DNA of 64,000 nucleotides, from contig NC_058133.1 in the NCBI RefSeq assembly GCF_016433145.1, forward strand, positions 261,563,836 to 261,627,835, given 5' to 3'. The notes under the pieces are model-generated. The model made no database searches. It saw nothing but the letters and a program-made list of their open reading frames with translations, and was not told the origin of the DNA. Positions 4,357 through 55,589 of this stretch are shown here, piece after piece. Position 1 is the stretch's first letter. The number at the start of each line of letters is the position of its first letter. The position numbers and the translations under genes were made by a program. The DNA is from Gracilinanus agilis. Lineage: Eukaryota.

Positions 4357-4605
<249 letters not shown>

Positions 4606-6845: not shown

Positions 6846-6924
6846 GGGACTGAAGGCCAAGGGGGTGCATGTTCAGTCATGCTATGATTATGTTGAGCAG
6901 GAGCTCAGTTTCAAGGCAGGTTTG
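6846..6924 (+). pseudogene. Decayed partial copy of the 3' end of the PACSIN1 SH3 exon, including its splice donor
   Basis: 6856-6924 aligns by hand to 4507-4584 at 58/69 identities plus one 9-nt deletion. It reads AKGVHVQSCYDYVEQELSFKA-G|gtttg, against [25 protein letters not shown]|gtttg for the real exon. Confidence 0.88.
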
Positions 6925-9900
6925 GCCTCACTTACTTGCAGCAGTTAGAGTTTGGAGGTGGCCTGAGCATCTCCTGACTTTGGCTCACCCTGCCCTAGGG
7001 CCTTTGGGGGGCAGAGGGAATGGTCTTCTGGCTGAGTCACTGAGCTCGGCCCCATGTTTTGGGAAGTACTATAGGAGATGGGAATCCTGGTGCAGAGCTC
7101 AGCTGGGATCGTCACAGTTATACAATGCCTACTCTTTTTCCCATCCCTAAACCAGGGTTAGGGGAGCTGAAGGTGAGCTCCAGGTTGGTGGGTGGCCTTT
7201 CCCAGAGATTCATCCTCTTAGCATCTCTCTATGGCAGGGAGGGGTGGGTAATTGTCTCAGGGCAGCCATATTACCCTAGTTGTGGTTGCTGACCTCCATG
7301 GAAGGGGTTATCCCTCCAAATATATGCACACAAAGGTGCCCCCCCCCCGCCAGGAAACACTTGCTGCTTGGCTTCTAGGACTCTGAAATTCTGAAAGGGT
7401 CTGGCACCTTGCAGAGAAAATCAGAAACAGCAGTTCCCTTTGTCATAGAGAGTAGAGAAAAACACTATTTTGTCATGTTTAACATTTGGAATCCAAGGAG
7501 GGAGGCCCCTACCTCTTCCTCTATTTCTAGATATACCATGTGGACCCCGTTGTTCTTCTCTACTTCTGTTCATCTTCCCCTCCCCCTTCCCTTTCCCACC
7601 CTGGGGCAGGCACTGTGGGGATTCTGTTCCTAAGAGCCTGTGTGAGTGTATGGTTGAGAGCCATCCCTTGAGATCTTGGGTCTGGGGACCAGTTACTGGC
7701 AAGGGAGAAGAAGAGGAATTCCCATGGTGAGGGCAATGATTTTGTTCCTCTTGACCCACCTACCTCCATTCAAAATTCTAAGGTTAAACTTCTGTCCATC
7801 CTCCCCTTTCATCCTCAAGAGAGCTATTCTTAGAGAAACTGAGGTCACTCCCTACCCCCAACTCTAATGGACAGGACTCCATATGATTCCCAAAACACTT
7901 AGGAGGAAAACTGGACAGGGGAAGAGCAGCCTTTGTTCTTTAGAAGGTGGGAGCCCTGACACTTCAGCAAGGTGACTATTGCCTTTGTCAATACAGTAGT
8001 CCAACATCCCAGGAGTCTTCTTTTCTCCTTGATTCCTTCATCTTCACTTTGTCAAAGAAGTGGTGAGTTTGTTTCTACTGCCCTTCTCTCCCCACCTTCT
8101 TGGTCTGGGCAGGCTTGGACCATGGCCAGATGAGCTCAGAAGGTCTGGGGTAAATGGCTGATGGTCCCTACAGAGATGGAAGAATTTCCTGCTAAGGAAA
8201 GGTAGGAGATACTAAAGATAGAGGCTTCAAGGTCTTCACCTCCTCCTATCTGGACAACTGCAGGGGAGCCTGGAGGTAAACTTTATCCAAGCCAAAGGTC
8301 ATCAGCCTTGGAATAGAATGAGAGAAGATTCCACAGAACCTTCCCGGCCCCCATCCAGAGCATCCCCTCCCTACTGGAGTGTGTTGGGGTCCAGTAGCAG
8401 GGAGTGGTGTTGATGAAGGGTGCCTGGTGACCCATGAAGCTTTAGGGTCCCATGGCTGGGTCTCTCTGTGAAGCTAATGCCAATGGATGGCCATGCAGCA
8501 CCAGGTGAGACTTGATCTTAGCAGCTTTCCATCCCAGTCCTTAGAAATCTTCAGCCCTCCTCCTCGAGCATGTTAAACAGAAGTCCATTCTGCCAGCATC
8601 AAGATCCTTTATTTCTTAATCTGATCACCCCTCCCCCTTACCCTTTTATTGCTGCTAAAGCAGATGGAGGTCTGAGCCAGTGGGAACTGTGGAAGTGGAC
8701 TTTGAAGCTGAGGCCATGGACAAGCATCCCTTATCAGCCAGGGTCACAAAGAACCCCCAGAGAGAGTTCTTGAGTATTTTTTTTTGCCTCTGGATACCTT
8801 GACTATCATTTTCCTAGAACCCATCCTGAAGCTTTAACTCCCAGACTCTTTGAGCCCTTGATGCCCAGTGGCAGTCTTCTCAGAGGGACCTAATTGGAGT
8901 CTGACCTTTCCCTTGGGTCAAAGGCAGCCACCTGTTAGGTGCACTGCCCCTCTCCAGCTTTCCCCCACATCCACACATCTTCTCTTCCCACTTTTCTCCT
9001 CGCTACTGATTTCAGCTTTAGACTTCCACTCTAATCTGAGGTGGTCTGCAAAACTCAAAGCATCCTTTCGGGAAATTTTCGGTCAACATTGCACACACTT
9101 CCCATCTTCATCCCATCTGGACAGGCAGAAAGGGCCCAAGATTCNNNNNNNNNNNNNNNNNNNNNNNNNNNNNNNNNNNNNNNNNNNNNNNNNNNNNNNN
9201 NNNNNNNNNNNNNNNNNNNNNNNNNNNNNNNNNNNNNNNNNNNNNNNNNNNNNNNNNNNNNNNNNNNNNNNNNNNNGCCCAAAAGCAACTCTCTTCTCCA
9301 GGTTAGTCCTAAAGCCAATTAGGACAGTGGGACTCTGCCTCTTGTTTCCTCCTCTCCTCCCCTCCTTATATCCAATATTCCCTAGTCCATCCTTGTGGAA
9401 ACGCTGGCATACTTCTGCATCTTAGGACATGGACACCACTCTCTCTTACCGACAGGCCCAGAGACTTCTCTCTAGTTAGGGAAGGGAAGGGATTGCTGTT
9501 TACCCAATCTCTAAGTCTCCTTTGTCTTTCTGCTCTGGACTCCAACCTCTCCATGCCCTCAAGTCTTGCCCAGGGAATTGTTTGGGGAGCCTCCATCCCT
9601 TTTGACTGCTGAGAAGTTCTCATTCCCACACTGTCCTAAAAGAGCTACTACGTTGGCTTTCCCTCTGGCTTTTCTGGGACTTTGGGACTAGTTTCCACCC
9701 TGGACTTGCCTAGGCTAAAGGAGTATCTGCTAGGAAATGGGAGAAGACCAGTGGTGTTTTTCTATGGCTCCATAATAGACACAGCCCCATTCCTCCATTG
9801 CTGTCCATCCCCACTCTCACCCTACAACACACACACACATAAAAACACAAACAAACATATAAACTGTGATTGACTGAATTCAAACCATAAGCCTGTTGCT

Positions 9901-13878: not shown

Positions 13879-14047
13879 CTCCCAAAGGTTTTCAGTGATA
13901 AAAGCTTCCTTTGGCAAGGGTAGGGATTGGGATGGAGACAGAGAGGCACCTACATTTTTCATAATGGCAGGCACTGGCCAGTTGGGTAGGATGTGGGGGC
14001 TTGAGGCTTCTTAGGCTTTTAAATTCCTTTATTCCATTCAACTAAAC

Positions 14048-14240
14048 CAGTGGTTCCCAAACTTTTTTGGCCTACCGCCCCCTTTCCAGAAAAAATATTA
14101 CTTAGCCCCCTGGAAATTAATTTTTCTTAAATTTTAATAGCAATTAATAGGAAAGATAAATGCACCTGTGGCCATCACCATTTTCCTGGATCGCTGCAGC
14201 ACCCACCAGGGGGCAGTGGCATCCACTTGGTGAATCACTG
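14048..14240 (+). mobile_element. hAT (Charlie-type) MITE, 193 bp
   Basis: The termini are cagtggttcccaaa ... tgaatcactg. A perfect 8-bp TSD, aactaaac, lies at 14040-14047 and 14241-14248. Confidence 0.9.
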
Positions 14241-15479: not shown

Positions 15480-15658
15480 TCAGACAGGATGCACAAACTG
15501 GTAAACCAATCGCTGGGAAATGTCAGGTTTGCGAATGATCCCCTTCTTGTAATACTGGCGGATGGAGCGGCTCAGCTTGTCATAGTTCATGGCCGGACGA
15601 TTCTTGCGGATGCCCCACAGCCGGGCTACCTGGGCTGAGTCCTCGATCTTGAAAATGC
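15480..15658 (-). CDS. SPDEF: SPDEF last coding exon, second half of ETS domain, stop TGA at 15482-15480
   Basis: The acceptor is catcctccAG (15660-15659). It reads (G)[58 protein letters not shown]. The five exons sum to 990 nt, giving 329 aa plus stop. Confidence 0.97.
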
Positions 15659-18600
15659 CTGGAGGATGTTTGTGATGTGAATGTAAGAAATCAGGGGAGG
15701 AGAGCAGGGCGAAGAACAGAGGGATAAGGGAAGAGAGATGGAGTTCATTTAGATCAGTTTGAGAATTTTGGATGGAGGGGGCGTTTGCAGAGTCTCTGCT
15801 CTAGACCAAACTGCAGAAGGGAAATAAAGGAGGCATCTGATGGGGAGGGGAGGGCAGGTAGTCTTCCCTCCTAAACCTCCCCTGCAAATCAGAAGTATAC
15901 CCAAAGTCTCATAATAAGTCTGTGAGTCCATCTTTGTGCCTTCAGGCAGAACTCTAGCTGGATCACTAAGGATGGAGAGCTCCCAGGTTGCCCTTTTCCT
16001 TTAAATCCACTTTCTAGGATGGGGCAACATTTTCTATTTTCTCTTGGATATGCATTTTGGCATTCCCTCAACCCATTCCACCAAGAAGCTTCTTCTAATT
16101 GTTCCCTACAGTTGCTCTTGCTGTAATCAGACTCTCCGCCATTCTTCAAGGCCAAGTTTGAGTTCTACCTATGTCCTCTTCACTACTTGAGTTCATGATG
16201 TTATTGTTCAATCTCATCGGACTCTATTTGACCCCACGGACGTTGACCATTGGCTTTTCTTGGTAAAGACACTGGAGTAGTTTGCCATTTCCTTCTCCAG
16301 GGTCCTCCTTTTACAAATGAAGACCTGAGGCAAATAGGGGTTCATTGACTTGCCCAAGGTTTCACAGTAGAGTGTCTGAGGCCAGATTTGAATTCAGATC
16401 TTCCTAACTCCAGACCTGAGGCTCTACATACTGCATCATCTAGCTTCCCAGTCCATAATGACTTTTCCCTTACAATCCCTAAAGAGGCCAGCAGCCTAGA
16501 GTAGTGAAAAGAGCATCTGACTGGTGTCAGAAGACGTGGGTTCAAATCCAGGCTTTAGTACTTATTGGCAATATGACTGTGGTCAAGCCACTTGGGCTTT
16601 TGAACAAAGCATTGGACAAAGTCTCACGTTAATCTTGTGAACAAGATGGGATCAATGGGGAATAAAAGACAGCAAGACTACATGGATTCAAAACTGATTG
16701 AATGACCAGATAATAATCATGATCATCATCATCAACATCATCTTATTAGTAATAGTTAGCAATTTTCATATAATCATTTCTTTTTTTTAAGATCTGTAAA
16801 GCACTTTACAAATATCCTATTGGATCCCCACAACTCTGGGAAATAGGTGTTATTATATATAACTCTCCTAATTGCTGAACATGCCATCTTTGTCCAGTAA
16901 CCACCAGGAGGGCTCGCTACTGAGGGAAATGAATCAGAATTTTTGGGGAGGAAATGAATTACATCAATCTCCACATGCTCACAATAAAGGCAACTGGAAC
17001 ACATCAGGAAGCTGCAACTAATTGGGAGAATGGAGCACGGGTTCTCCTTGGCAAAAGCAAATAGAAGGGTGGCAGCTAGATAGGTTAGTACAATTGAGAG
17101 CCAGGCAAGAGATGGGAGGTCCTGGGTTCAAATCTGACCTCAGACACTTCCTAGCTTTGTGATCCTGGACAAGTCATTTAATCCCCATTGCTTAGCCCTT
17201 ACTGCTTTTCTGCCTTGGAACCAATTGATTCCAAGATGGAAGGTAAGGGTTATTTGGTTGTTGTTGCTGTTGTTTTCTTTTTAAGATCAAATAGAAGATG
17301 AAGCTAATTTTGTCTTGTGGGGCAAAGGCAACAAGAAATGGCTCTTTGTGAGACATGAAGCCAACCACTTTGCATTGTTAATGTGGAGTGTAAGCAAAAA
17401 AGATCAACATGAAAATAAAAACATTTTTATATATTGATAACATCGGAGGCAGAGGGGGTAAGGAGGTAGAGAAATTATACGACAGCATCACTTTTGTTGT
17501 TATTGTTGGGCAGCTAGGTAGCACAACAGAGAGAGTGCTGGTCCTGGAGTCAGGAAGATTCATCTTCCCAAGTTCAAATCTGGCCTCACACACTTACTAG
17601 CTGTGTGACCTGGGCAAGTCATTTAACCTTGTTTGCCTCTGTTTCCTCAACTGTAAAATGAGCTGTGGGAAGAAATGGCAAACCACTCTAATATCTTTGC
17701 CAAGAAAACCCAAATAGAGTTACAAGTGATGGGATTGAACAACAAAAAACAACTTAACATTTGTTGCTACAGCATCATAGTCAGCATAGAGGAGGCTGGT
17801 GAAAAATATGTTGGAAAATAAGGTTCAGGATCAAGAAACCAAAAAAGGCTGAAAGATTGCAATTTACACAAAAACCATATATCATGAATATGTTACTCAA
17901 GAAGAGGAGCACCAAATAATCCTTCAAAAACTCTGAAAATAGCAATAACTGAACAGACAGAAAATGGATGGTTACTGATGTGTGGGATCATTCACAAAGC
18001 AGCTGTCAAAACATTAACTTGTTAAAGCAAAAAAAGAATCAAAACCAGAATTTTAAAAAAAGAATAAAAAGCCAAGCAGGAATTATTGTGTAGATGGGGA
18101 AAAAAACAACTCTAAAAAATGAATAGCTATTGACCAGGAAACACTTGAACACTAGTGTATATAAATGTGAAATTCTAACTATGAGGGTTTCTGAGAAACA
18201 TGGGAAGACTTGTATGAACTGATATAGAGTGAAGGAAAGACCAGAAAAAAACGATATACGCCATGACCATAGCTAGGTGGCACAGCATATAGGACAATGA
18301 ATCTTAGAGTTAGGAAAACCTGAATTTAAATCTGGTCTCAGACATTTACTAGCTGGGTGACCCTGGACAAGTCACTTAACCCCCATTGCCTAGCCCTTAT
18401 TGCTCTTCTGCCTTGGAACCAACACATGATATTGACTCTAAGACAGAAGGTAAGGATTTTTTTTAAAATACTTTTTTTAAAATATAGGATGGCTCTCTGG
18501 GAGTGGAAGGGGAAGGATACTGCTCATAACTATGATGATGTAAATAAAGATGACATCTATTGAAAACTTATTTTAAAAAATAAGTAAATAAGTGCTTATT

Positions 18601-18899: not shown

Positions 18900-19310
18900 A
18901 AGTAGAAATCAATGTAAATAGAAGTCTCTAGTGGGATCTGTCCTTGGTTCTGTTTTGTTCATTTTTTTTAATCCGTGATTTGGATAAAGGCACAGACATC
19001 ATGCTTAGCAAATTTGCAGATGACACAATGTTGAATTAAGTAGCTACAGAATCAAAAAAACCTAAAAGATTCCAACAATTCTAAAATATAAGACCAGGTC
19101 TTATCAGATGAAATTTAGTGGTGACAAATGCAAAGTCAGATCTGGGTCTAAAAAAAAATTGCACAAGCTCATGATGGTAGAGGCATAGCTAGGTTTGTGT
19201 GAAAAAAGATGAAGGGGTCTTATTTGATTAGAAACTTGACAGGATTGTGATATGGAGGCCTAAAATGCTAATGTGATCTTAGATTGTATTAAGTGAGGCC
19301 AAGCATCAAA
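18900..19310 (+). mobile_element. CR1/L3 LINE RT remnant
   Basis: The decayed RT reads DLDKGTDIMLSKFADDT (19000-19030 region). Further L3 pieces lie near 16605-16712, 10270-10620 and 21640-21930. Confidence 0.75.
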
Positions 19311-19405
19311 AAAAAAATGACCATTCAACTCTGCCTGGTCAGAGTCTTCCCAGTGCCCAACGTGGCCCTTGCCACCATTCTCCTTCCTGAGAATTCTCCA
19401 CTCAC

Positions 19406-19552
19406 CTTTCTCCTTATTGAGCCATCGGATGAAGCGGCCATAGCTATGTGGTTTGAGCAAGAGCTCTTTAAGGAACTGCCAAAGGTGGATAGGCTGGCCA
19501 GAGCAGGAAGAGTCCACTTCATTGTTGTTCCAGGTCTCCTCGCTCCCCACGG
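19406..19552 (-). CDS. SPDEF: SPDEF coding exon, first half of ETS domain
   Basis: The acceptor is ctcctccAG and the donor is G|GTGAG; length is 147 nt. It reads (A)VGSEETWNNNEVDSSCSGQPIHLWQFLKELLLKPHSYGRFIRWLNKEK, with the ETS LWQFL signature. Confidence 0.97.
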
Positions 19553-19676
19553 CTGGAGGAGAGATAGACTACTGAGTCCTGGAGTGCCTAGAAGGGCTCC
19601 CCGTTTGTCTTGGCTCATCTGCACCCCTTCCCCTACTCCCTTACCACCCTAGACCCAAACCTCCCAAGGGTCTCAC

Positions 19677-19721
19677 CACAGACGTGCAGAGCTCCAGAAG
19701 TTCTCTCTTTCATCCAGGCGG
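19677..19721 (-). CDS. SPDEF: SPDEF 45-nt coding micro-exon (linker)
   Basis: The acceptor is ctgctacAG and the donor is G|GTGAGA. It reads (A)AWMKERTSGALHVC and keeps phase between the neighbouring exons. It is not shown in the ORF track. Confidence 0.92.
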
Positions 19722-20725
19722 CTGTAGCAGAAGGAAGGGCTTGATGAGAATCACAGAGACACCAGCCTGAGTGTCAGGGAAGAGGAAGGCAGGGACCTTA
19801 GGACCCTGGTCCAAGAGCTGGAAGAAACTTCAGAGGCCATCAAGTCCAAACCTCTTATTTTATAGATAAGGAAACTGAGGCCGGGAGGTAAAGTGATTTA
19901 CCCCATTAGAGGTGGGATTGGAACCCAAGTCCTCTGACTCAGACCCAGCCTTCTTTCTCCTGGACCATGTGGGGACTGAACTGCAGGGCTCAAAATAAGT
20001 GTATTATTAATGTGGAAAACAATAATAAGATCTGAGGATGCACTAAGAGATGTGGTATCCAGAAAGGAGGAGGAGATGGTCAGGGCATATCTAGAAGGTT
20101 CGGTTCTAGGGGTTCTGTTTAAAAGAATATTGGCATGTTGGAGCTTGTCCAGAGGAGGATGGCTCAGAATGATTGCAGGGATTTAAGTCAGAAGTATATG
20201 GCAGGGTAGAAGACAGGACTGGAGCTAGTGCTGAGGTTGGGAATGGGAATGGAATTAGAACTGGGAAAGGGACCACAAGTAGGGCTAGAACAGAGGATCA
20301 CGGAATTAGAACTGGAAGGGACCAGTCCAACTCCTCTCTCCCATTTTGCGTTTGAGGAAACGGAGTAATCAATGCAACTAGGAACTTCTGGGGTGGGATT
20401 TGAACCCCATCTTTGTGCCTGCAAGCTCAGGGTCCTCTATCCAACATATCAGGGAATGGGGGTGATGCAGGAGATGGGTTTGGGGGCCAAGATCAAAGGA
20501 CTTGTCTGTTTTCCCTAGAAGAGAGTAAATGACTTCCCACCTGGAGCCCAGATGTGTCTTCTTGGCATGTTCTGTTCCAGGATAAAGGTCAGTATAGGGT
20601 AGGATGTCACCGTGGTTAGTAGCAGCCAGTGAGGAGGAGCAGGAGAGTGCCTAGAACCCTTGCCCCTTGGGTTTGCGGTAGTCCAGCCTTTGCCCCACTG
20701 TCCTTCACCCCCTGCCCATGCCTAC

Positions 20726-20923
20726 CTGATTTCCAGATATCCAAGTGAGCGTGCAGAATATCACCACATAGAGGGGAGCGCTGGCGGAACTGCTCTTCTG
20801 ACATGGCACACAGCTCCTTGCCCCCCAGCTCTTGGAAGGCTTTGCCCACCGGAGGCAGCCGGTACTGGTGCTCTGTCCAAAGCAGCCACTTCTGCACATT
20901 TCCAGGACTCCAGTCACTGGGGT
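20726..20923 (-). CDS. SPDEF: SPDEF coding exon, PNT (SAM/pointed) domain
   Basis: The acceptor is cccaacAG and the donor is G|GTAGG; length is 198 nt. It reads (D)PSDWSPGNVQKWLLWTEHQYRLPPVGKAFQELGGKELCAMSEEQFRQRSPLCGDILHAHLDIWKS. Confidence 0.96.
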
Positions 20924-22509
20924 CTGTTGGGGGGAAAAGTTCTACTCTCAGTTCCTGAGACTACAATGCCTCTTCATGGGAAGGGGATTGAGGCTTCTCT
21001 ACACCTTTTCCCTTCCTAGTTCCCCAACACCTATTTTTTTCCTTTTCACAGGATATAGATAGGTTCCTTTTCTCCCCAACCAAACCCCTAAAAGCAGGGG
21101 TGAATTTTTATTTATTTTTTACTTTTTTTAAAAATGCATTTTTATTTATTCATTTTTAAGCCCTCACCTTCTGTCTTAGAATCAATACTAAGTATTAGTT
21201 CCAAGGGATAAGAGCCATAAGGTTAAGTGATTTGCCCAGGGTCACACAGCTAAGAAGTGTCTGAGGCTAGATTTGAACCCAGCATCTCCTGCCTGCAGGC
21301 CTGGCTCTCTATCCACTGAACCACCTAGCCACTCCGAGGCACACATTTTTAATCTTCCTTGTATCTTTCTCAAGTGCCCAGGACAGGACTAACCACATAA
21401 TGAGCAAACAATGGACAACCTCTGAGATCCTTTCCAATCCTGTGAAGTACTTATTGACATTAATGTTATGATGTGAAGGATCCCTTCCAAGATAGCTCTC
21501 TTGCCCCTAAGAAAGATATCTTCCCCCAAAGGCTACCAGAGCACATGCAATTCTAGCACCAAAGATTTATTCTTCTGGGTGTTGAAAGTTTTTGCAACTT
21601 TTTCCTGTTTAAGGTGAAATTTCTCAAGAATAAATGTAAAATCTTACACAGATTCAAAAAATCAATTTCACAAGTATAAAATAGCTATGTAGCAGTAGTT
21701 CAAGGGTGGGGAAAGATCTGGGGTTTTTAAGAAAACCCAATGTAAGACGCAGCATAGGGAAGTCAAAAATTACTTGAGTCTTAGTCTTCATTAAGAGAAA
21801 TCTTGTTCAGAAAACTCTATTCCATCCTGATCAGACAATGTTTGAAGTCAATTCTGGATGCTCATTTGATACTGACTCAATGGAGGGTGTCTATGGCAAC
21901 CTGGATGGGCCTGGAGGCTTAAGGAGAGATGGGATTAGAGTTGTGATTTCATTGATATTATGAAGAGATTCCTTCTATCTTCTCTGAAATTTAGAGACTT
22001 GCCCAGAGTCCTACAGCTATTATTATGTAACAAAGGCAGGTCTTGAATCCACATCTCTCTGTCCACTAGACCACACTGTCCCTGGATGCCATAGATGCAA
22101 ATTGAAAACTTATGAAGGGCTCAGGTAGCACAATGCTGATTGCATCCTACTAAAATCTCAGCTGTTTGCCTTTGCTCCTACACATCTGCTGCTTTACATA
22201 AGAGAAGAAAATCACACAATTACTCTGATTGAGTCCACTACAAATTTATGTTTTGTTGTAATTTAGTCATTTTCAATCATGTCTGACTCTTTCTGACTGC
22301 TTTTGGAGTTTTCTTGGGAAAAAAATACTGGAATGGTTTGCCATTTTCTTCTTTAGCTCATTTTACAGATGAGGAAACTGAGGCCAACAGGATGACAGGA
22401 CTTGCCCAGGGTCATACAGCTAGGAAGTGTCTAAGATCAGATTTGAAGTCAGATCTTTCTGTCTCCAGACCCAGAGTTCTTTCCACTGCACCACTTAGCT
22501 GCCCAATCC

Positions 22510-38239: not shown

Positions 38240-39110
38240 GACTGGATTCCTTAAAAGTCACTTCCAGTTCTGACATTCTATATTCTTTAATATTTTTTTC
38301 AGCTCACTCTATGTTCTTTATCTTAACAACATTCTATATTTGAAGATACTTTCCAGCTCAAACATTCTATGTTCTTTATCTTAACATTCCTTGTTCTAAG
38401 GTCCCTTCCAGCCCAAATATTCTATGTTCTTTGCCTTAACAACATTCTATATTTTAAGGTTCTTTCCAGCTCCAACATTCTATGTTCTTTGTTCTCTTCC
38501 AGCTTAGAGATTCTATATTCTTTAACAACATTCTATATTTTAAGGTCCCTTCCAGCTCTGACAGTCTATGTTCTTTGTCTTAACAACATTCTATGTTTTA
38601 AAGTCTTTTCCAGCCTAGACATTTTATGTTCTTTGTTTTAACAATATTCTATATTTTAAGGTCCCTTCCAGATCCAACAGTCTATGTTCTTTATCTTCTT
38701 TAAGATACTTTCCAGCCCAGATATTCTATGTTCTTTGTCTTAATAACATTCTATATTTTAATGTCCCTTCCAGTTCTGACATTCTCTATTCTTTATCTAC
38801 TTTAAGACACTTTGCAGCCCAGATAGTCTATGTTCTTTGTCTTAACAACATTCTGTAGTCTTAGGTCCCTTCCAGATCCAACAGTCTATGTTCTTTATCT
38901 TCTCTAAGGCACTTTCCAGCCCAGACAGTCTATGTTCTTTGTCTTAACAACATTCTATAGTCTTAGGTCCCTTCCAGCTCCGACATTCTGTCTTAACGTA
39001 CCATGTTCTAAGGCCCCTTCCAGTTCTGACAGTCTGTTTTGACATTCTAAGTTCTAATGACCTTTCCCCAGATTCCATATTCTAAACTCCAATATTCCAC
39101 ATTCTAGGGC
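38240..39110. repeat. Tandem array (~17 units) of a MIR3-tail-like unit with a 102-bp higher-order period
   Basis: The unit core is taaggtcccttccagctctgacattctatgttct. The word gtccc recurs at 38661, 38763, 38865 and 38967, a spacing of 102 = 44+58. Confidence 0.9.
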
Positions 39111-39384
39111 CCAAGTTTCCTTTCACCCTTGTGACTTGAGTTTATGGGCTCGGTGATTATGAGACTGACTTTTTTTTATGAGTACTACTTGACAGAGAAT
39201 GAGGCTTCCACCCTGGGTACCCATCAAGGGATATGTGTCGGGAGGGACATGGGCAAAGCTCGGTGAGAAATCCTCCTCCCTCTCCCACATTTCCAGCACT
39301 CTGAGGCTTTTTCTGGCTTCAGTGACTGAGAGTTTCTCTCTCCTGCCCCGACACCCAGCCTCCCCATGCGTCCCAGCGGCCCAC

Positions 39385-39805
39385 CTGCAGTGATGTTGAG
39401 CAGCTTGCAGGCAGTCTCAATGTCCTTCAGCACCTCCCCGACCACCATGGACTGTACTTGCTCTAATGAGTGCTCCTCCAGGGTCAGGTTACCTGGGGGG
39501 TAGTCTAGACCAGCCCCCTGGGCCTGGCTGTCGATGATGGGGCACTGCTCTGGCTCCTTGGGGGCCTCTTCACGGCCCCCATCGACAGGATCCTTCCCCG
39601 CCCAGGTTCCCTCTTCAGGGTATAGCATATCGAAGTAGGAGAGGTAGAAGGCCGACAAGCCCTGCTCAGGGGTGGCGGGCGGGCTGGGGCTCCAGCCTCT
39701 CCTCTCGGCCCCCGACCCCTTTTCCAGGCCGGTCCTTAGCCCCGTGTCAGGCAAGAGGTGGCGGGTTGGCGGTGGGGCGCTCAGGCCGGGGCTGGCGCTG
39801 CCCAT
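39385..39805 (-). CDS. SPDEF: SPDEF first coding exon (N-terminal 140 codons + 1 nt)
   Basis: The ATG is at 39805-39803. It reads MGSASPGLS...PEQGLSAFYLSYFDML...LEEHSLEQVQSMVVGEVLKDIETACKLLNITA, and the donor is G|GTGGG at 39384. An upstream acceptor (ctccacAG, 39833-39832) gives a 26-nt 5' UTR portion (39831-39806). Confidence 0.96.
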
Positions 39806-40130
39806 GGCTCCACTCAGGTTGACCGAGGTGTCTGTGGAGGGTAGAAGAACGAGGATTTCAGTTTCATCCCCAAAGTCCTGCTCCCCCCGCGGGGGCTGCT
39901 AAGCCTGTTAGGGGGATAAGAGACTGGGCAGGGACCCTGCCAGGCTCAGGGGCTTCAGGGTCATTGGGCAGCGAGAAGACCCAGCCGAGCTCTGGAAGAC
40001 ACAGACGTGCCACTAGAAAAGGGAAACGCACCGCGGCTAAGGCGAGATGGGGTGAAGGGAGGCCTCCCAGGCGTGGGGCGGTGGGACCGAGATCAAGGCG
40101 CCCGAGGGGAAAGGACTTCGCCTCCCCAGG
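39481..40130. promoter_or_regulatory. CpG-island-like region over the SPDEF first coding exon and its upstream flank
   Basis: About 34 CpG in 650 bp by hand count, against a strongly CpG-depleted background. A GC box-like ggggcgg lies near 40075-40081. Confidence 0.6.
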
Positions 40131-40735
40131 ATGCTGATTGGAGAAGGACAAGCTCTGCACATTTTAAAGGGTGCTGAACTCTCGAGTCTTTGCCTCCGGA
40201 GGGGGACACATGAACAACTACCATAACAGGAATAATAAGGAGGGCGGACAATCATATATTGCTTAATATAAATTAATCAATGGTGTTGCTTAATAAAATT
40301 GCTTCAACAAAGTCATTTACAGACATGACCTCATTGGATCCTCACAATAGCCTGTGATGCAGGAAGTGCTACAATCATTCTCAGGTGAGGGCTGAGGAAA
40401 CTTAAGACTCAGAAAAATGAAGAAAATTGCCAAGGTGAGTGGCAGAGGCAGTTCTCCCGGCTCCCGGTGGATAGATCCTCACTCTTACTCTTTACAGACA
40501 CCAGGCTGCCTTCAAGACAGATTTCCCCATGAATCAGGAACTAGAGGGCATGGATTTGAATTCAGTTCTGCTCCTTACTCTTGGTGACCTTGGGCAAGTC
40601 ACTCTTAATATTATTAATATTAACAACATTTATATATTACAATTAATGTAATTTATTAATGACATGTAAATGATAATTAATGATATTAATAACAATAATG
40701 TCATTTGTAAAAAGAAAGGCTTCAGAAACACTGTC

Positions 40736-40864
40736 TCCCTCCTGACCCCCAACCAGGCACCCAGCCTCACCACAATCCACTCATCCCAACCTCTGACTAG
40801 CAATGATATCGAGCAGCTTGCAGGAAGCCTTAATGTCCTTTAGCACCTCCCCAACCACCATGGA
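40736..40864 (-). pseudogene. Decayed partial copy of the 3' end of the SPDEF first coding exon, with adjacent intron flank
   Basis: 40800-40864 matches 39387-39451 at 57/65 with no gaps. It reads SMVVGEVLKDIKASCKLLDIIA against SMVVGEVLKDIETACKLLNITA. The intron words cacccagcctc and cc(a/c)acct are also shared. Confidence 0.92.
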
Positions 40865-40980
40865 TGGATCCTGGGTCCCTTCTAGTTTCAAATCTATAGT
40901 TCTAGAGTTTCTGATCTCTTCTGGTCTTACTCCTGGTACTCATTCAGTCAAGAAACACCATCAAGAAATAGCATTGTTGG

Positions 40981-41180
40981 GGGCAGCTGGGTGGTCCAGT
41001 GGATTGAGAGCCAGGCCTAGAGACGGGAGGTCCTGGGTTCAAATCTGGCCTCAGACACTTCCCAGCTGTGTGACCCTGAGCAAGTCACTTAACTCCCATA
41101 GCCTAGCCCTTACTGCTCTTCTGCCTTAGAACCAATACCTAGTATTGATTCTAGGATGGAAAGTAAAGATCTAAAAAAAA
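40981..41180 (+). mobile_element. Young SINE1_Mdo-type SINE
   Basis: The sequence is near consensus (ggggcagctgggtgg.ccagtggattgagagccaggcctagagacgggagg...). It is flanked by atcaagaaa(t/c)ag(c/t)attgt at 40960-40977 and 41181-41198. Confidence 0.9.
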
Positions 41181-41183
41181 ATC

Positions 41184-41366
41184 AAGAAACAGTATTGTCC
41201 ATCCTTCTGCCATCAAGAAACAGTATTGTCTGTCCTTCTGCCAATAAGAAACAGTATTGTCCGTCCTTCTGCCAATAAGAAATAGCATTGTCTGTCCTTC
41301 TGCCAATAAGAAACAGTATTGTCCATCCTTCTTCCATTAAGAAATAGTATTGTCCATCCTTTTGCC
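41184..41366. repeat. 31-bp minisatellite, 6 copies
   Basis: The unit aagaaacagtattgtccatccttctgcca(tc/at) starts at 41184, 41215, 41246, 41277, 41308 and 41339. Confidence 0.93.
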
Positions 41367-44300
41367 TCTAGGTTAAGCAGGTCCTTGTGGTAAAGGACTG
41401 ACCATCTTAACTCAGGCCTCTGATCTATTTCTTCAAAAAAAGGGTTCTTTCTTTCTTTCCTCAATAACCTATCCTAGTATCCCAACACACAAATGAGGAA
41501 GTGTCTTCAGAAGTCTAACTCCAAGCCTTTCTATGTAACCTAACCTGTTTCCTCTTGCCCTCTTATTTCCTCTTATTCTATCACCAGAGACAAAACAGAG
41601 AACGGAACCTTCTAATTGTACTATACCTAGGAATGTGTTGATAAATGTTTAACAACTGGCTTTCTGTGGGAGGTACCTAGAGCATTCTATGCTTCATATC
41701 TTAATAATATTCTATATTCTAAGGTCCCTTCCAGCTCTGACATTCTGTGTTCTGTATCTCAACATTCCAGGTTCCAAGGCAGAAGAGAGGTAAGGCCTAG
41801 GTAACTGGGGTCAAGTGACTTGCCCAGGGTCACACAGCTTGGAAGTATCTGAAGTCGCATTTGAACCCAAGACCTCCCATCTCTAGGCCTGACTCTCTTT
41901 CTATTGAGTTTTCTACCTGGTGGATTGATTTTTGACATCAAATCAGTTTGAGAATTCTAGAAATAAAATAAAAATCCAATATAGAACATTCTGGATTCCA
42001 TTTTATGTAAAATGAATAAACTTTATTCTTGGTCTCCCTAATAACCTGCTCTCTCTTCAATTCTATCCTAGTCTGAGGATGTCTAACTGCCCATCCTTTT
42101 AAGAGGATAGGTTTGCTTATCTCCTTAGAGAAAAATCAGCATGGTATATTGGGCAGCTATGTGGTACAGTGAGTATAGTGTCAGGCCTAGGGTCAGGAAG
42201 ATCTGAGTTCAAATGTGGCCTCAGACTCTTACTAGTTATGTGGCCTTGGGTAAGTCACTTCACCCTGTTTGCCTCAGTTTCCTCATCTTTAAAAGCAGCT
42301 GGAGAAGGAAATAGCAAACTACTAGCTGTGTGCCCCTAGGAAACTCACTTCACCCTGTTTGTCTCAGTTTCCTCATCTGTAAAAAGAGCTGGAGAAGGAA
42401 ATGGTCAATCACTAGCAGTGTGAACCTGGGCAAGTCACTTCACTCTGTTTGCCTCAGTTTCTTCATCTGTAAAAGAAGCTGGAGAAGGAAATGGCCAACC
42501 ACTTCAGTATCACTGCCAATAAAACTTCAACTGGGGCCACAAGGAGTTGATCATGAATGAAACAACCAAACAACAAAATAGTGAGTTGAATATTGGCCCT
42601 AGACTACCTGGTCTGGTCACTACTTCAGTCACTTACCGAAGCTAGGCAAGTAGCTTAATCTCTCTGGGTCTCATTTTTTTTCATAAGTAAAAAGAAAAGA
42701 TTAAACTCTGACCTATAAGGTTCATTGCCATTCTAAATATGTGGTGCTTTCTATGATTCTTTTGTACATTTACTCACACTAAAATATTTTTTTCACTTTT
42801 TAAGCACTGTATTTGTTGTTTGTTTTTTCCACACTAAAATATGAAGAACTCAATATCCCATTCCTTGACCCAGTGTCTAAAGAAAGCCCAGAAAGGGGGC
42901 AATGTTTAACTCAAAGGAATGAATTGAGAAAACGAGGTAGATTGGGCTCCATGATCTCTATTGGTCTCTTCCAACATTCTGCCATTTTGTGATGATGCTG
43001 GGGAGCCCTTCTGGTTGACCTCCAGGCATCAAGGGGAGTAAAGGAGACAGGCAGGGACAAGGTCTCCCCCCTCCTCGACATATAATTCATGATTATGGAG
43101 AGAAAAAGTGCAGGAGAATGAACGAACGAATCGCCAACTACTCTGGGAAAAGAAGGTTTAAGAAGGATCCTACCCAGGTCTTCAGACCCACAGGCAGAAC
43201 CAGAAGAATAAAAATCTGGCATGGAAATTGAATCCAGCTTTCTAGAGATTGTTAGTAAGAACAAGGAGGGGAAAAAAGGTTTCCTTTGGCTGTCTCTCCC
43301 TTCCTTGGGTTACTTGAAGTGACAAGGTCTGAAAGGTCAGAATGGGGTGGAGTGTGACAGGTTGGGGTGGGGGGAGACAGAGGGAAGGCCTGGAGAGAGT
43401 TCAGGTCCTTCTGTGCAAACACACGTGTATGCTGTGGGATGAGGTTATTTACCTAGGCATTCAGGACAGGCTGCACCAACAGCCTGGCTCTCCCTGTCCC
43501 TCTGTTCCCCGCCTCCTGGGCCCACACCCTTCCCCCCTACCCCAAGTCAGTGCCCCATTAACCACAAAGGTGTGGGAGTCCCTAGAGGTCCCCCATTCAC
43601 CACCATTTTCTTTCTTGTTCTCCAATCTGGGCCATATCCTCCCCCCACCCCCATTGCTGCCACGTTAGGACATATACTGCCAGTCCTGCTAGGCTGACTG
43701 CCAGGAAGAGCAGGATTTTCCCAAGAAGCAGGAGAACTCACTCCCCCCTTGTGCTGTGGCTATATTCTTGGCTTCAATCATGTGTAGGAAACAAGGATGG
43801 TTGCTGGGCTTTGGGGTTAGGGCGACAGGGGAAGGGACAAGTTGGGGAGTGGCAGAGTTTGCCAAACTTGGGAAAGAGGGAGCAGACAAGCCTCCCCCCA
43901 CCTTCCTGCTGCCACCCTGATGCCTCGTGCCCACACACCTGAAACCCAATCTCTTCCCACAAGCTCCTGAGGGATTGAAAAAGCTTTGATTAATTCCAAG
44001 TTCCAAGATTTCCTTTTGGGTCACTTTTTCCAAGTGAAAGAGAAGTTAATCATTAATCTTAAGGCTGTAATTGTCTGAAAGCTGTACAAAAGGTGGAAGG
44101 TGGTGGGGAACATTGCCCAGAGGGGAGTAGGGAGCTCCTTAGGACGGGGGGAGACCTCTTCTTGCCTAATCCAAGAGACTCAGGGGTGGCATTGCCCAGG
44201 CACCCCCACTAAGCTTACCAGCCAAGGAAGATGGGTAGCACTGGGGGACAGGGGTGCATGTCCTTGCACACCTCAATGGACCCATCTGTTCTTATCTTGC

Positions 44301-47817: not shown

Positions 47818-48991
47818 CTGGGGTTCTTAGTCCTTAGAGTCTGAAATTAGTCTTTTGGTTGGTTGGTTGGTTTTTTTTAATAATTGTAACCCAAAAGTCT
47901 CAGTGCAGTTTTAAGCAATATAAATAGATATTTATATATGATATTTGGGGAGGTGGCATAGTGGATAAAGAATTAAGTTTGGAATCAGGAAGATTCATCT
48001 TCATCAGTTCAAATCCAGCCTTGGACCATTTTCTAGCTCCGTGACCCTGAGTAAGTCACTTTACCCTGGTTAGTTCAGGTCTTCATTTGTAAAATAAACT
48101 GGAAAAGGAAATGGCAAACCACTCCAGTATCTCTGCCAAGAATACCCCAAATGCGATCATGAAGAATTGAACTCAATTAAACAAGAACAACAAATGATAT
48201 CTAATTTACATAAGTATATAAAGTCATAAGTATATCGCTCATTTCTTTTGTGATCCTACATAGTTCGTTTTATGCACTGAAAAGCATTATTCTGGGTGCA
48301 GCTGGGTAGCTTAGTGGATTGAGAGTCAGGCCTAGACACGGGAGGTCCAAGGTTCAAATCCAGTCTCAGACACTTCCCAGCTGTGTGACCCTGGGCAAGT
48401 CACTTGACCCCCATTGCCCACCCTTACCACTCTTCCACATAGGAGCCAATACACAGAAGTTAAGGGTTTAAAAAAATAATAACAAAAAGAAGAAAAAAAA
48501 GGAAAGCATTATTCTGGCCACAGAATTAATACTGGAAGAAAAAATCGTGCATGTTATCTCCTGAGAAGGAACTGAAAGGTGAAAATTTGAAAGATTTAAG
48601 TTGTATGAACATGTCTCTCTCCCAAATGATACTTTAGCTGTGATATGGGAAGGGTAGAAAGGGGATGGGACATTTGAGGATAAATGCTATTAATAAATAC
48701 ATTAATTATTATTATTTTGCAAAAAGGAAGAGACTGGACTATCCAGAAGGAAAGCTTTGAACGTTTCATGTGGGATTTGTTATGTGGTTATGAAGCAAGC
48801 TAAACATCTAAGAGATTTGTGATTTCATTTATGTACAATCTTTTTTTGTACATGGAAATGCTTGGTTTATTCAGTTTTGTAAAATTTGGAATAAAAAAAC
48901 CAAAACCAAAAGTATTATTCTGAGAATAGATCCAGAGGTTTTACTAGACTGCCAAGGGGAGTCTGTGACACTAAAAAAATTCAGAACCCTT
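47818..48991. mobile_element. Old Charlie-type MITE split by nested MAR1 (~47948-48195), SINE1 (48296-48502) and L1 fragment (48517-48908)
   Basis: The ends are ctggggttctta.. and ..cagaaccctt. The MITE words aaagcattattctg|agaa..ccagactgccaa.. are continuous once the inserts are removed. An uninterrupted relative lies near 49800-49945. Confidence 0.7.
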
Positions 48992-50339
48992 ACTCTAATA
49001 CAACACACTCATTTTACAGATGGAAAGACAGACCTAGAAGAGAAGGACTTATCCAAGTTCACAGATCAAGCAAATGGCAGAGCTAGCACAAATCTATATT
49101 TAGCACCAGAGACCAATGCATCTGTCTTTAGACTATTCTCTCTCCAGACCCAATCCATCACTGGAAATGGCAAACTACTCCAGCATCTCTGCCAAAAACA
49201 CCCCAAATGAGATCATGAAGAATTGGACACAAATGAACAATGACACAAATTATATCTATTTTACATACATATATAAAATCATAAGTATATCACTCATTTC
49301 TTTTGTGATCCTATATATTTTACTTTATGCATTGAAAAGCATTATTCTGGCCACAGAATTAATATTGGAAGAAAAAATTACGAATGTTGCACAGAGGGAA
49401 AAGGGCACAGACTAAAATAGAGTGTTTGGTCACAATGAACTTTATGAATTCATAGATCCATTTTTTTTTCACCAACAGGTCAAAGGTAAGGAGACAGATT
49501 TCATCTTATCATGGAGACAAAGTTGCCTAGCAATCAGAATAAAGTGAAAAGGATTGTTTCAAAAGATAACAAGTTCCAGAGCAGCTTGGATAGAGTCAGT
49601 CCTGGAGGTGGGAGGTCTTGGATTAAAATCTGGCCTTTGATACCTTTTTGCTGTGTGACCCGGGACAAGTCACCTAACCTCAATTGTCTAGCCCTTACCA
49701 CTCTTCTGCCCTATGTATTGATTCTAAGATGGAATGTAAAGACTAAAAATTTAAAAAAAGGTAATGAGTTCCCCATCAACAGATACTTTCAAATAGGGCA
49801 GAGGTTTGCTAACTGTATTTCAATAAAATTGATTTCCTTTGTAATACTACATATTTTATTTTATGTACTTAAAAACATTATTCTGAGAAGGGGTCCACAA
49901 GTTTCAACAGACTGCCAAAGGGTGCCCATGACACAGAATCCCTGGGATTAGGATTAACATCTGGATGACCACTTCTCAGGGATATTCTGGAGATGATTCT
50001 TGTTTAGAAATGGATTTGTTTACAAATGAAGTCTCTTCTAGCTCTCAGATGATGAACTTCTAAGTTAGGAGGCAGCTCTCTTGGGAGCTTTTTCTCCAGA
50101 AAACTCCTTACTCTGGGTTGTTTTCTCTCTCCTTCCACAGTTTAGGACTCAGCTGAGGGATAGGCAAAGATTTAGGGCCTTGGCAAACAGCTGGAAGCTC
50201 GTGTACTCTTGGGGCCAGTGAGTAGGCTGGCTTGGGTTTCAGTTTCCTGGTTAGCAAGCCAGAACCTTGGAGAGAGCCGCAGGGTTGGGAGCAAGATCAG
50301 TGGGAAATTTTAGACCCTCCATGAGACTGGGCTCTTGTT

Positions 50340-54775: not shown

Positions 54776-54960
54776 CAGTGATTCCCAAAGTGGGCACCAC
54801 CGCTCCCCGGAGGGTGCTGCAGCGATCCAGGGGAGCTGGTGATGGCCACAGGTGCATTTATCTTTCCTATTAATTGCTATTAAAAAAAAAATTTCCAGGG
54901 GGCTAAGTAATATTTTTTCTGGAAAGGTGGCGGTAAGCCAAAAAAGTTTGGGAACCACTG
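54776..54960 (-). mobile_element. hAT MITE, same family as 14048-14240, opposite orientation
   Basis: The terminal inverted repeats (TIRs) cagtgattcccaaa / tttgggaaccactg match at 13/14. A perfect 8-bp TSD, ctctaaac, lies at 54768-54775 and 54961-54968. Confidence 0.92.
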
Positions 54961-55589
54961 CTCTAAACCATGGAAGCAGGGTCAGTGGCTATTGAAAAGG
55001 CATTTAGAGGGCAGGTAGTTGGTTCAGTGGTTAAAGATCCAGGCTTAGTGACAGGAAGTCCTGGGTTCAAATATGGTCTCAGACACTTCCTAACTGGGCA
55101 AGTCACTCCATCCCCATTGCCTAGCCCTTACCGTTCTTCTGTCTAGGAACCAATACACAATATTGATTCTAAGATGGAAGGTAAGGGTTTCAGGGAAAAA
55201 AAGAAAGAAAGAAAAGAAAAGGCATTTGGCACAATTTTCTTTGAGACCAGTTGGTTCCTTCTCCAAATGACAGATCATCCCATTTCTTTTCCCCAGTTTC
55301 TCTCATAATTTCTATCCCTCTTCTCCTCTTTCTCAGCATTTGGAAAAAAATTCTCAAAGAATCTTTATATTGGAAGGATTGAGAAAGCACATGGTCAAAG
55401 GTTATAACAGTCAGTCGGGGGGCCTCTGTTTCTTACTATATCAGGCACTTACTCCCTGTGTGACTTCATGTGGTCATTTCTCCTTTGTGGTCTCAGTTTC
55501 TTCAGCTTTGAAATGAGGGTGTTGGACTAATTGATTCAACTGAAGATCCCTTCCAACTCTAACATTCAAGGCTTCTAACAATCATATGG

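What the first reader, a model, noticed from the sequence alone, without database searches (positions are those of the whole stretch)
40736..40864. Decayed copy of the SPDEF exon end (start of PNT region) 1.4 kb upstream of the real exon
Seen: 40800-40864 matches 39387-39451 at 57/65 with no gaps, reading SMVVGEVLKDIKASCKLLDIIA against SMVVGEVLKDIETACKLLNITA (3 synonymous, 5 non-synonymous changes). Homology continues past the exon into intron words (cacccagcctc; ccaacct vs cccacct), with a 7-nt insert (ctgacta) just before the old donor. Inference: this is a DNA-level duplication rather than a retrocopy, since intron flank is included. It is in the same orientation as SPDEF, upstream of the start-codon exon, so it could be a cryptic 5' exon using GAG|GTTGGG.
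Basis: partly seen in the sequence, partly recalled or inferred. Interest (0 to 1): 0.7.

Follow-up and report, generated by a model that had tools for sequence, protein, structure and literature searches.

The report
Dead SPDEF exon-end copy in intron 1
A 147-base, decayed second copy of the end of an opossum SPDEF coding exon and the start of the next intron sits 1.4 kb away inside the gene's first intron, and it looks like an ordinary inert leftover of a small local DNA duplication, not a hidden exon.

Summary
Window 40718-40864 is a same-strand copy of 39316-39451. It is the only such pair in the window (blastn E about 1e-16 to 1e-19). The coding part matches at 57/65 with no gaps and gives the reported translations.

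The gene is SPDEF on the minus strand. Its PNT and ETS exons hit PDB 2dkx and 1yo5, and the protein is 98% identical to Monodelphis domestica SPDEF.

The intron flank alone aligns better than all 5000 shuffles, so genomic DNA that still held the intron was copied. Homology stops abruptly at 40864/40865, and nothing else of exon 2 or its surroundings is duplicated.

All five amino-acid changes lie on the copy's lineage. Exon and intron parts differ about as neutral decay predicts (JC 0.17 against 0.30).

The copy is not upstream of the gene. The counterpart of the first coding exon of M. domestica isoforms X2/X4 maps to 44285-44219, so the copy lies inside intron 1. Its old donor is dead and no usable acceptor precedes it.

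The scan has already noted several similar relics in this genome, one of them in this window (PACSIN1). Verdict: an ordinary duplication relic of low interest.

The parts
40718..40864 (-). The copy, 147 nt. 40798-40864 derives from the last 67 nt of SPDEF exon 2. 40718-40797 derives from the first ~69 nt of intron 2, with three indels.
   Evidence: (D13, D19). Homology ends abruptly at 40864/40865; the next 60 nt are 25% identical.
39316..39451 (-). Parent segment: the 3' end of exon 2 (39385-39451) plus the start of intron 2 (39316-39384).
39385..39831 (-). SPDEF start-codon exon. The acceptor ccctccacag| lies at 39832/39831, the ATG at 39805-39803, and the donor CAG|GTGGGC has its GT at 39384-39383.
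   Evidence: (98% to M. domestica SPDEF).
44219..44285 (-). Counterpart of the first coding exon of M. domestica SPDEF isoforms X2/X4 (MGPLRCARTCTPVPQCYPSSLA...), with donor CTG|GTAAGC. It defines intron 1 as 44218..39832.
   Evidence: tblastn gives 16/21 aa, E 1.5e-7. The sequence was read. The frame into exon 2 was read by eye only.
40770..40797 (-).
   Evidence: Rough PWM scores of 1.4, 3.8 and 8.1 bits, ranks 74, 37 and 5 of 208 GT sites in intron 1.
20727..20930 (-). SPDEF PNT-domain exon (approximate limits).
   Evidence: ORF 20619-20960 hits PDB 2dkx (SPDEF PNT domain) at E 4e-41. tblastn.
15483..15659 (-). SPDEF last exon (ETS domain, C-terminal part). The N-terminal part of the ETS domain lies at 19392-19553.
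   Evidence: PDB 1yo5 at E 3e-35; Pfam Ets; tblastn at 100%.

Best explanation
The feature is an inert, neutrally decaying relic of a small local duplication of genomic DNA.

About 140 nt spanning the exon 2 / intron 2 boundary of SPDEF was copied once. The copy was placed in the same orientation about 1.27 kb away (1.41 kb start to start), inside intron 1 of the same gene. It carried no acceptor and only a fragment of the exon, so it was never a working exon. It has since accumulated substitutions and indels at the rate of the surrounding intron.

Shown here: the homology, its sharp limits, the inclusion of intron sequence, the position inside intron 1, decay on the copy's lineage, and poor splice signals.

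Inferred: the copying mechanism. The most likely routes are template switching or gap-filling during replication or break repair. A larger tandem duplication later cut back by deletion is also possible. The age is also inferred. At about 0.15 substitutions per site on the copy's lineage it is probably tens of millions of years old, and older than the split of this opossum from Monodelphis.
For: - **Unique, significant pair.**
- **Intron flank homologous on its own.** 0 of 5000 shuffles reached it, so unspliced genomic sequence was copied.
- **No further colinear homology.** The other 380 nt of exon 2 has no partner anywhere between 40865 and exon 1, and nothing lies left of 40718. It is a stand-alone fragment.
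- **Changes are on the copy.** The real exon reads LKDIETACKLLNITA, exactly as the solved SPDEF PNT chain 2dkx and all listed marsupial and eutherian SPDEF proteins do. All 5 amino-acid changes therefore lie on the copy.
- **Neutral pattern.** Identity is 57/67 in the exon part and 49/65 plus 19 gap columns in the intron part. The difference in substitutions is not significant (Fisher p 0.19). The Jukes-Cantor distances I worked out from these identities are 0.17 and 0.30. Their ratio of 1.8 is what is expected if only the parent exon is frozen and everything else drifts.
- **No sign of selection on the copy.** The differences are 3 synonymous and 5 non-synonymous, with 8 transitions and 2 transversions.
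- **Poor splice signals.** The old donor is degraded and no acceptor precedes the copy. M. domestica gene models splice exon 1 straight to exon 2.
- **No RNA family.** Rfam found nothing.
- **Common in this genome.** The scan's earlier notes list the same kind of relic repeatedly here, including one 34 kb away in this window.
Against: - No read data could be laid, so transcription or rare splicing of the copy is untested.
- No orthologous DNA could be fetched, so neutrality rests on one pair of short sequences (67 and 65 aligned bases), not on a cross-species rate comparison.
- A fairly good new donor (GTG|GTGAGG, about 8 bits on a rough matrix) has arisen 27 nt past the old one.
- The copy keeps an open 52-codon frame with an ATG.
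Confidence: 0.86

Rival explanations
1. The copy is a cryptic or cassette exon in the SPDEF 5' leader. It would be spliced in between exon 1 and exon 2 in some tissue, adding a 26-codon upstream ORF (MVVGEVLKDIKASCKLLDIIASQRLG*) that could damp SPDEF translation.
For: It has the sense orientation inside intron 1. It contains an ATG and an open frame. A new GTG|GTGAGG donor at 40770 ranks 5th of 208 GT sites in the intron.
Against: No acceptor precedes it: the best within 200 nt scores 2.7 bits against 9.0 for the real one. M. domestica models skip it. The substitution pattern is neutral.
Confidence: 0.04
2. The copy is a retrocopy of a fragment of unspliced SPDEF pre-mRNA. An endogenous reverse transcriptase would have made it, for example by template switching during LINE or SINE insertion.
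For: A SINE-tail-like motif lies directly next to the sharp breakpoint at 40869-40912 (D9, E 0.05). Intron sequence would also be present in pre-mRNA.
Against: - By eye, no poly(A) and no target-site duplication flank the fragment.
- On the + strand the neighbouring motif reads in the same direction as the copies in the nearby arrays, while the SPDEF fragment is antisense to it. A sense SPDEF RNA could not have been joined to it by simple template switching.
- The closeness of source and copy in the same orientation (1.3 kb) is what local DNA copying produces.
Confidence: 0.05
3. The copy is a constrained non-coding element. It would be kept because it binds a factor or pairs with the exon, for example as a splicing decoy or an enhancer.
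For: Identity looks higher in the exon-derived part (85%) than in the intron-derived part (75%). Two of the three local unique direct repeat pairs in this window involve exon ends.
Against: - The difference in identity is not significant (p 0.19). It equals what is expected when only the parent exon is frozen.
- The exon-end bias is an ascertainment effect. The intron part alone scores 17, too low to be found in a window-wide search, so only pairs with a frozen parent stay visible.
- The two copies are direct repeats, not inverted, so they cannot pair in the RNA.
Confidence: 0.03
4. The match is due to chance or to an assembly artefact.
For: None found.
Against: E is about 1e-16 to 1e-19. The copies differ by 15-25% with indels, whereas assembly duplications are near-identical. 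One run of the same organism holds 0.80 of the sampled 31-mers across 39130-40970, though it may be the source sample.
Confidence: 0.01

Closest known systems
Partial (intragenic, internal) gene duplications and their relics, as reviewed by Katju 2012 (PMC3449122, section 3.3)
   Same: Part of an ancestral gene, with a breakpoint inside an exon, was duplicated incompletely into the same locus. The derived piece then diverges by point mutations.
   Different: This piece is only about 147 nt. It has no promoter, no acceptor and no complete exon. It shows no sign of being recruited into a transcript, so it is debris, not a new gene structure.
Tandem exon duplication giving alternative or mutually exclusive exons (Kondrashov & Koonin 2001; Letunic, Copley & Bork 2002; cited from my own knowledge, not read here)
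   Same: An exon-derived sequence lies in a neighbouring intron of the same gene, in the same orientation.
   Different: Only the last 67 nt of a 447-nt exon is present. It has no acceptor and its donor is degraded. It lies ahead of the start codon, so it cannot swap with its parent exon.
Microhomology-mediated templated insertions (MMB-TI/MMBIR; Osia et al. 2021, PMC8421209)
   Same: A short stretch is copied from a nearby template and left as an insertion. Such events persist as germline or evolutionary variants.
   Different: That paper's search looks for templates within 100 bp that are the inverse complement of the insertion (its test insertions were 20-50 bp), flanked by microhomology. 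Here the copy is 147 nt, direct, and 1.27 kb from its template. The junction shows TGGA|TGGA in tandem, not a shared microhomology.
Other decayed exon-fragment copies noted by this scan in the same opossum genome (PACSIN1 in this window; PTPN6, F2, TTLL12, protocadherin elsewhere)
   Same: They are 80-240-nt decayed copies of part of an exon, sitting 1-3 kb from the parent in intron or flank. The earlier follow-ups judged them inert relics.
   Different: Those are unchecked AI notes, and I re-derived only the PACSIN1 pair. Some are inverted or sit inside an L1. This one is direct and lies in intron 1.

Membership tests
Local partial gene duplicate (DNA-level exon/intron fragment relic) | Significant similarity to a parent exon in the same locus | tested here: met
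   57/65 in the coding part. The whole pair has E 6e-19 and is unique in the window.
Local partial gene duplicate (DNA-level exon/intron fragment relic) | Homology extends into non-coding flank, so genomic DNA and not spliced mRNA was copied | tested here: met
   The intron flank alone scores 17, against 8.0 +/- 1.4 for shuffles; 0 of 5000 reached it.
Local partial gene duplicate (DNA-level exon/intron fragment relic) | Neutral decay of the copy | tested here: inconclusive
   The pattern fits neutrality: all 5 amino-acid changes are on the copy, JC is 0.17 against 0.30, and Fisher p is 0.19. The sample is only 67 + 65 sites, and no cross-species rates could be obtained.
Processed retrocopy | Intron-less, with a poly(A) tail and target-site duplications | tested here: not met
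   Intron sequence is present. By eye, no poly(A) or flanking direct repeat is seen next to 40718 or 40864.
Tandem-duplicated alternative exon | A complete exon copy with acceptor and donor, and a compatible frame | tested here: not met
   Only 67 of 447 exon bases are copied, and the rest has no partner. The acceptor scores at most 2.7 bits and the old donor 1.4 bits.
Cassette exon or cryptic 5' exon | Splice junction reads in RNA | not testable with these tools
No listed run is on record as RNA.
MMBIR templated insertion | Template within about 100 bp, usually inverted, with microhomology at the junctions | tested here: not met
   The template is 1.27 kb away and the copy is direct. The pre-insertion site is unknown, so microhomology cannot be scored.
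SPDEF (identity of the host gene) | PNT and ETS domains most similar to SPDEF, and orthology to annotated marsupial SPDEF | tested here: met
   2dkx at 4e-41, 1yo5 at 3e-35, Pfam Ets, and 98% identity to M. domestica SPDEF over exon 2.

The most novel reading that the evidence does not exclude
The fragment has been exonised in opossums. It would use the new donor GTG|GTGAGG at 40770 and a weak upstream acceptor, and would be included in a minority of SPDEF transcripts between exon 1 and exon 2. That would place a 26-codon upstream ORF, derived from the gene's own PNT-region coding sequence, in the leader, where it could damp SPDEF translation.
Probability: 0.04. Interest if true: 0.4.

Novelty: new member of a known kind. 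Interest (0 to 1): 0.1.

Why it matters
It matters little in itself. It is one more small duplication relic in an intron, of a kind this scan has already met repeatedly in the same genome.

Two points are of modest use:
- It shows why such relics are noticed mainly at exon ends. A pair stays recognisable only where the parent copy is frozen by selection, so the exon bias is an ascertainment effect and not a mechanism.
- The copy is a fossil that can be dated once orthologous marsupial sequence is compared, and it marks intron 1 of SPDEF for anyone annotating this gene in didelphids.

Tried and rejected
- **Read evidence.** The look-up of sequencing runs listed one strong holder (organism A, 0.80 of the words) and about 19 weak holders of a second organism (0.09-0.14). 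From then on I kept 41055-41095 out of every search and script (written as N in my working copy) and worked beside them.
- **Orthologous DNA.** No cross-species DNA comparison was possible. A human SPDEF protein appeared in the hit list (P0016) and was not fetched or used.
- **Spliced model.** It was searched exon by exon, by reference only. The joined protein was not built or searched. The frame from exon 1 into exon 2 was read by eye.
- **Larger tandem duplication.** I looked for the rest of a 1.4-kb unit to the right of 40865 and to the left of 40718. Only MIR-like repeat hits turned up, none at the offset of the pair (~1410).
- **Fragment inserted into a pre-existing repeat unit.** A profile of the neighbouring 102-nt repeat unit hits 40617-40630 (profile positions 38-51, E 1.2) and 40873-40897 (positions 62-88, E 0.05). 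The hits are colinear but too weak to count.
- **PDB and Pfam on exon 2 and on the copy's 52-codon frame.** No domain was found. The 22-residue pieces match only the N-terminus of 2dkx.
- **Rfam on 39000-41050.** Nothing was found.
- **Microhomology at the sharp breakpoint.** TGGA occurs twice in tandem (40861-40868). That is not the single shared copy expected from microhomology-mediated joining, so I draw no conclusion from it.

Full report
**Observation**

The window was read at 39100-41100.
- A repeat search found a gapless 88-nt direct pair, 39364-39451 against 40777-40864, at 80% identity. A second block, 39347-39366 against 40753-40772, is shifted by 7 nt (D13 and D19).
- Sensitive blastn extends the pair to 39315-39451 against 40718-40864: 72% over 151 columns, E 6e-19.
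- Neither segment has any other partner in the 64-kb window.
The coding match is 57/65 without gaps. The two translations are as stated. There are 3 synonymous and 5 non-synonymous differences.
- Homology ends abruptly at 40864/40865; the next 60 nt are 25% identical.
- On the other side it runs about 80 nt into the intron with three indels.
- The intron flank taken alone gives a local score of 17. Shuffles averaged 8.0 +/- 1.4, and 0 of 5000 reached it. Other 108-nt windows of the same intron scored at most 13.

One detail stays open. Three aligners put it about 25 nt into the intron, which keeps the old donor GT in register. The two placements score almost the same.

**The gene**

The minus strand carries SPDEF.
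- The ORF at 20619-20960 matches the solved SPDEF PNT domain (2dkx, E 4e-41).
- 15483-15800 matches the SPDEF ETS domain (1yo5, E 3e-35).
- 19263-19568 holds the start of a Pfam Ets domain.
- Exon 2 (39831..39385, ATG at 39805) is 98% identical in protein to Monodelphis domestica SPDEF isoforms X2/X4, and 91% to sugar glider and koala.
- Earlier notes of this scan name the genome as the agile gracile opossum. I did not verify that name independently.
- The spliced model was handled exon by exon, by reference. The joined protein was not built or searched.

**Where the copy sits**

The two M. domestica isoforms begin with an extra exon, MGPSRYARTCAPVLQCCPSSL, joined directly to the 5' end of exon 2. 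tblastn places its counterpart at window 44285-44223 on the minus strand (16/21 residues, E 1.5e-7). It is followed by a strong donor, CTG|GTAAGC, at 44219/44218.

Intron 1 is therefore 44218..39832. The copy lies inside it in the sense orientation, about 3.35 kb after the exon-1 donor and 0.89 kb before the exon-2 acceptor. It is not upstream of the transcription unit, so it could only act as an internal exon and not as a 5' exon.

**Splice potential**

They are good only for ranking, so I calibrated them on the real sites here.

| Site | Sequence | Score (bits) | Rank in intron 1 |
|---|---|---|---|
| Real exon 1 donor | CTG\|GTAAGC | 9.2 | - |
| Real exon 2 donor | CAG\|GTGGGC | 8.7 | - |
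| Old donor, in register (40797) | CTA\|GTCAGA | 1.4 | 74 of 208 GT sites |
| New donor (40770) | GTG\|GTGAGG | 8.1 | 5 of 208 |
| Real exon 2 acceptor | - | 9.0 | - |
| Best acceptor within 200 nt upstream of the copy | - | 2.7 | 73 of 350 AG sites |

The sequence ahead of the copy is purine-rich. The fragment therefore lacks what an internal exon needs. The M. domestica models skip the region.

**Is the copy under selection?**

- The real exon reads LKDIETACKLLNITA, exactly as the solved SPDEF chain and every marsupial and eutherian SPDEF listed. All five amino-acid changes (E>K, T>A, A>S, N>D, T>I) therefore happened on the copy.
- Identity is 57/67 in the exon-derived part. It is 49/65 plus 19 gap columns in the intron-derived part. 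The substitution difference is not significant (Fisher p 0.19).
- The Jukes-Cantor distances I worked out from these identities are 0.17 and 0.30, a ratio of 1.8. That is what is expected if the parent exon is frozen by selection while the copy and both intron stretches drift. No constraint on the copy is needed.
- This also explains why such relics are spotted at exon ends. The intron part alone would not pass a window-wide search, so only pairs with a frozen parent remain visible.
- In the whole window there are just three local, unique, direct pairs. Two of them involve exon ends: this one and PACSIN1 at 4507-4588 / 6856-6928.

**Origin**

- Nothing else of exon 2 (39452-39831), its upstream region or the deeper intron is duplicated near the copy. 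The simplest history is a single event that copied about 140 nt and placed it 1.27 kb away in the same orientation.
- A 1.4-kb tandem duplication followed by a deletion starting exactly at 40865 would also fit, but it needs two events.
- A retrocopy of unspliced RNA is unlikely. There is no poly(A) and no target-site duplication, and the adjacent SINE-tail-like motif has the opposite sense.
- There is a weak hint that the two flanks are halves of one repeat unit split by the insertion. The profile hits are colinear but have E 1.2 and 0.05, which is not significant.
- The copying mechanism (template switching or gap filling during replication or repair) is inferred, not shown.
- Known microhomology-mediated templated insertions use much closer templates, sought as the inverse complement of the insertion (PMC8421209).
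- Partial intragenic duplications with breakpoints inside exons are a recognised class (PMC3449122).

**Age (inference)**

The copy's lineage carries about 0.15 substitutions per site. At mammalian neutral rates recalled from general knowledge (roughly 2-4e-9 per site per year), that suggests about 40-80 million years.

DNA runs of a second organism hold 0.09-0.14 of the sampled 31-mers of this region. If this reflects divergence and not coverage, it means about 3% per lineage. The copy would then be several times older than that split and should be present in that relative. This is a prediction, not a result.

**What could not be done**

Those places were kept out of all later searches and scripts.
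- There is therefore no RNA evidence, no independent read support and no orthologous DNA. The remaining uncertainty is whether the copy is ever spliced in, and how old it is.

**Verdict**

This is a real but ordinary relic: a dead 147-nt copy of the exon 2 / intron 2 boundary of SPDEF lying in intron 1. The cryptic 5' exon idea is not supported. The scan has found the same kind of thing before on other DNA of this genome and once in this window.

Noticed in passing
window 4507-4588 and 6856-6928: This is the PACSIN1 exon-end pair already noted by the scan. My whole-window self-comparison recovered it as a unique direct pair (74% over 82 columns, E 3e-8, 2.35 kb apart).
   Followed up: partly
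window 48503-48555 and 49336-49388: The third local unique direct pair in the window: 53 nt at 90.6% identity, 833 nt apart, in the region upstream of SPDEF. I did not examine its nature.
   Followed up: no
window 44219-44285 (minus strand): An upstream SPDEF exon carries its own ATG. By eye it reads in frame through the exon-2 leader into the normal start, as in M. domestica isoforms X2/X4. It is only 16/21 residues identical between the two opossums, so the N-terminal extension looks weakly constrained.
   Followed up: partly
window 19678-19770 (minus strand): The 15-residue insertion of M. domestica isoform X2 (GWCLCDSHQALPSAT) is encoded here at 100% identity. This implies two alternative acceptors (about 19770 and 19725) for this SPDEF exon in both opossums.
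   Followed up: no
window 38254-39125 and 41153-41397: There are two tandem arrays. One is a 58/102-nt-period array of a SINE-tail-like motif in SPDEF intron 2, just past the parent segment. The other is a 31-nt-period array in intron 1. A SINE (about 40975-41181) seems to have inserted at the array's edge, with a diverged target-site duplication: TCAAGAAATAGCATTGT to its left and TCAAGAAACAGTATTGT to its right.
   Followed up: partly
window 14043-14240 and 54776-54965: An inverted pair of 199 columns at 87% identity lies 40.7 kb apart, with each side hitting only the other in this window. It is probably two copies of a low-copy repeat.
   Followed up: no
window 40770 (minus strand): The copy has gained a good-looking donor (GTG|GTGAGG) where the parent intron reads GGGGAGG. 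On a rough matrix it ranks 5th among 208 GT sites of intron 1.
   Followed up: partly
They lie inside a SINE copy. They were left out of all later searches.
   Followed up: no
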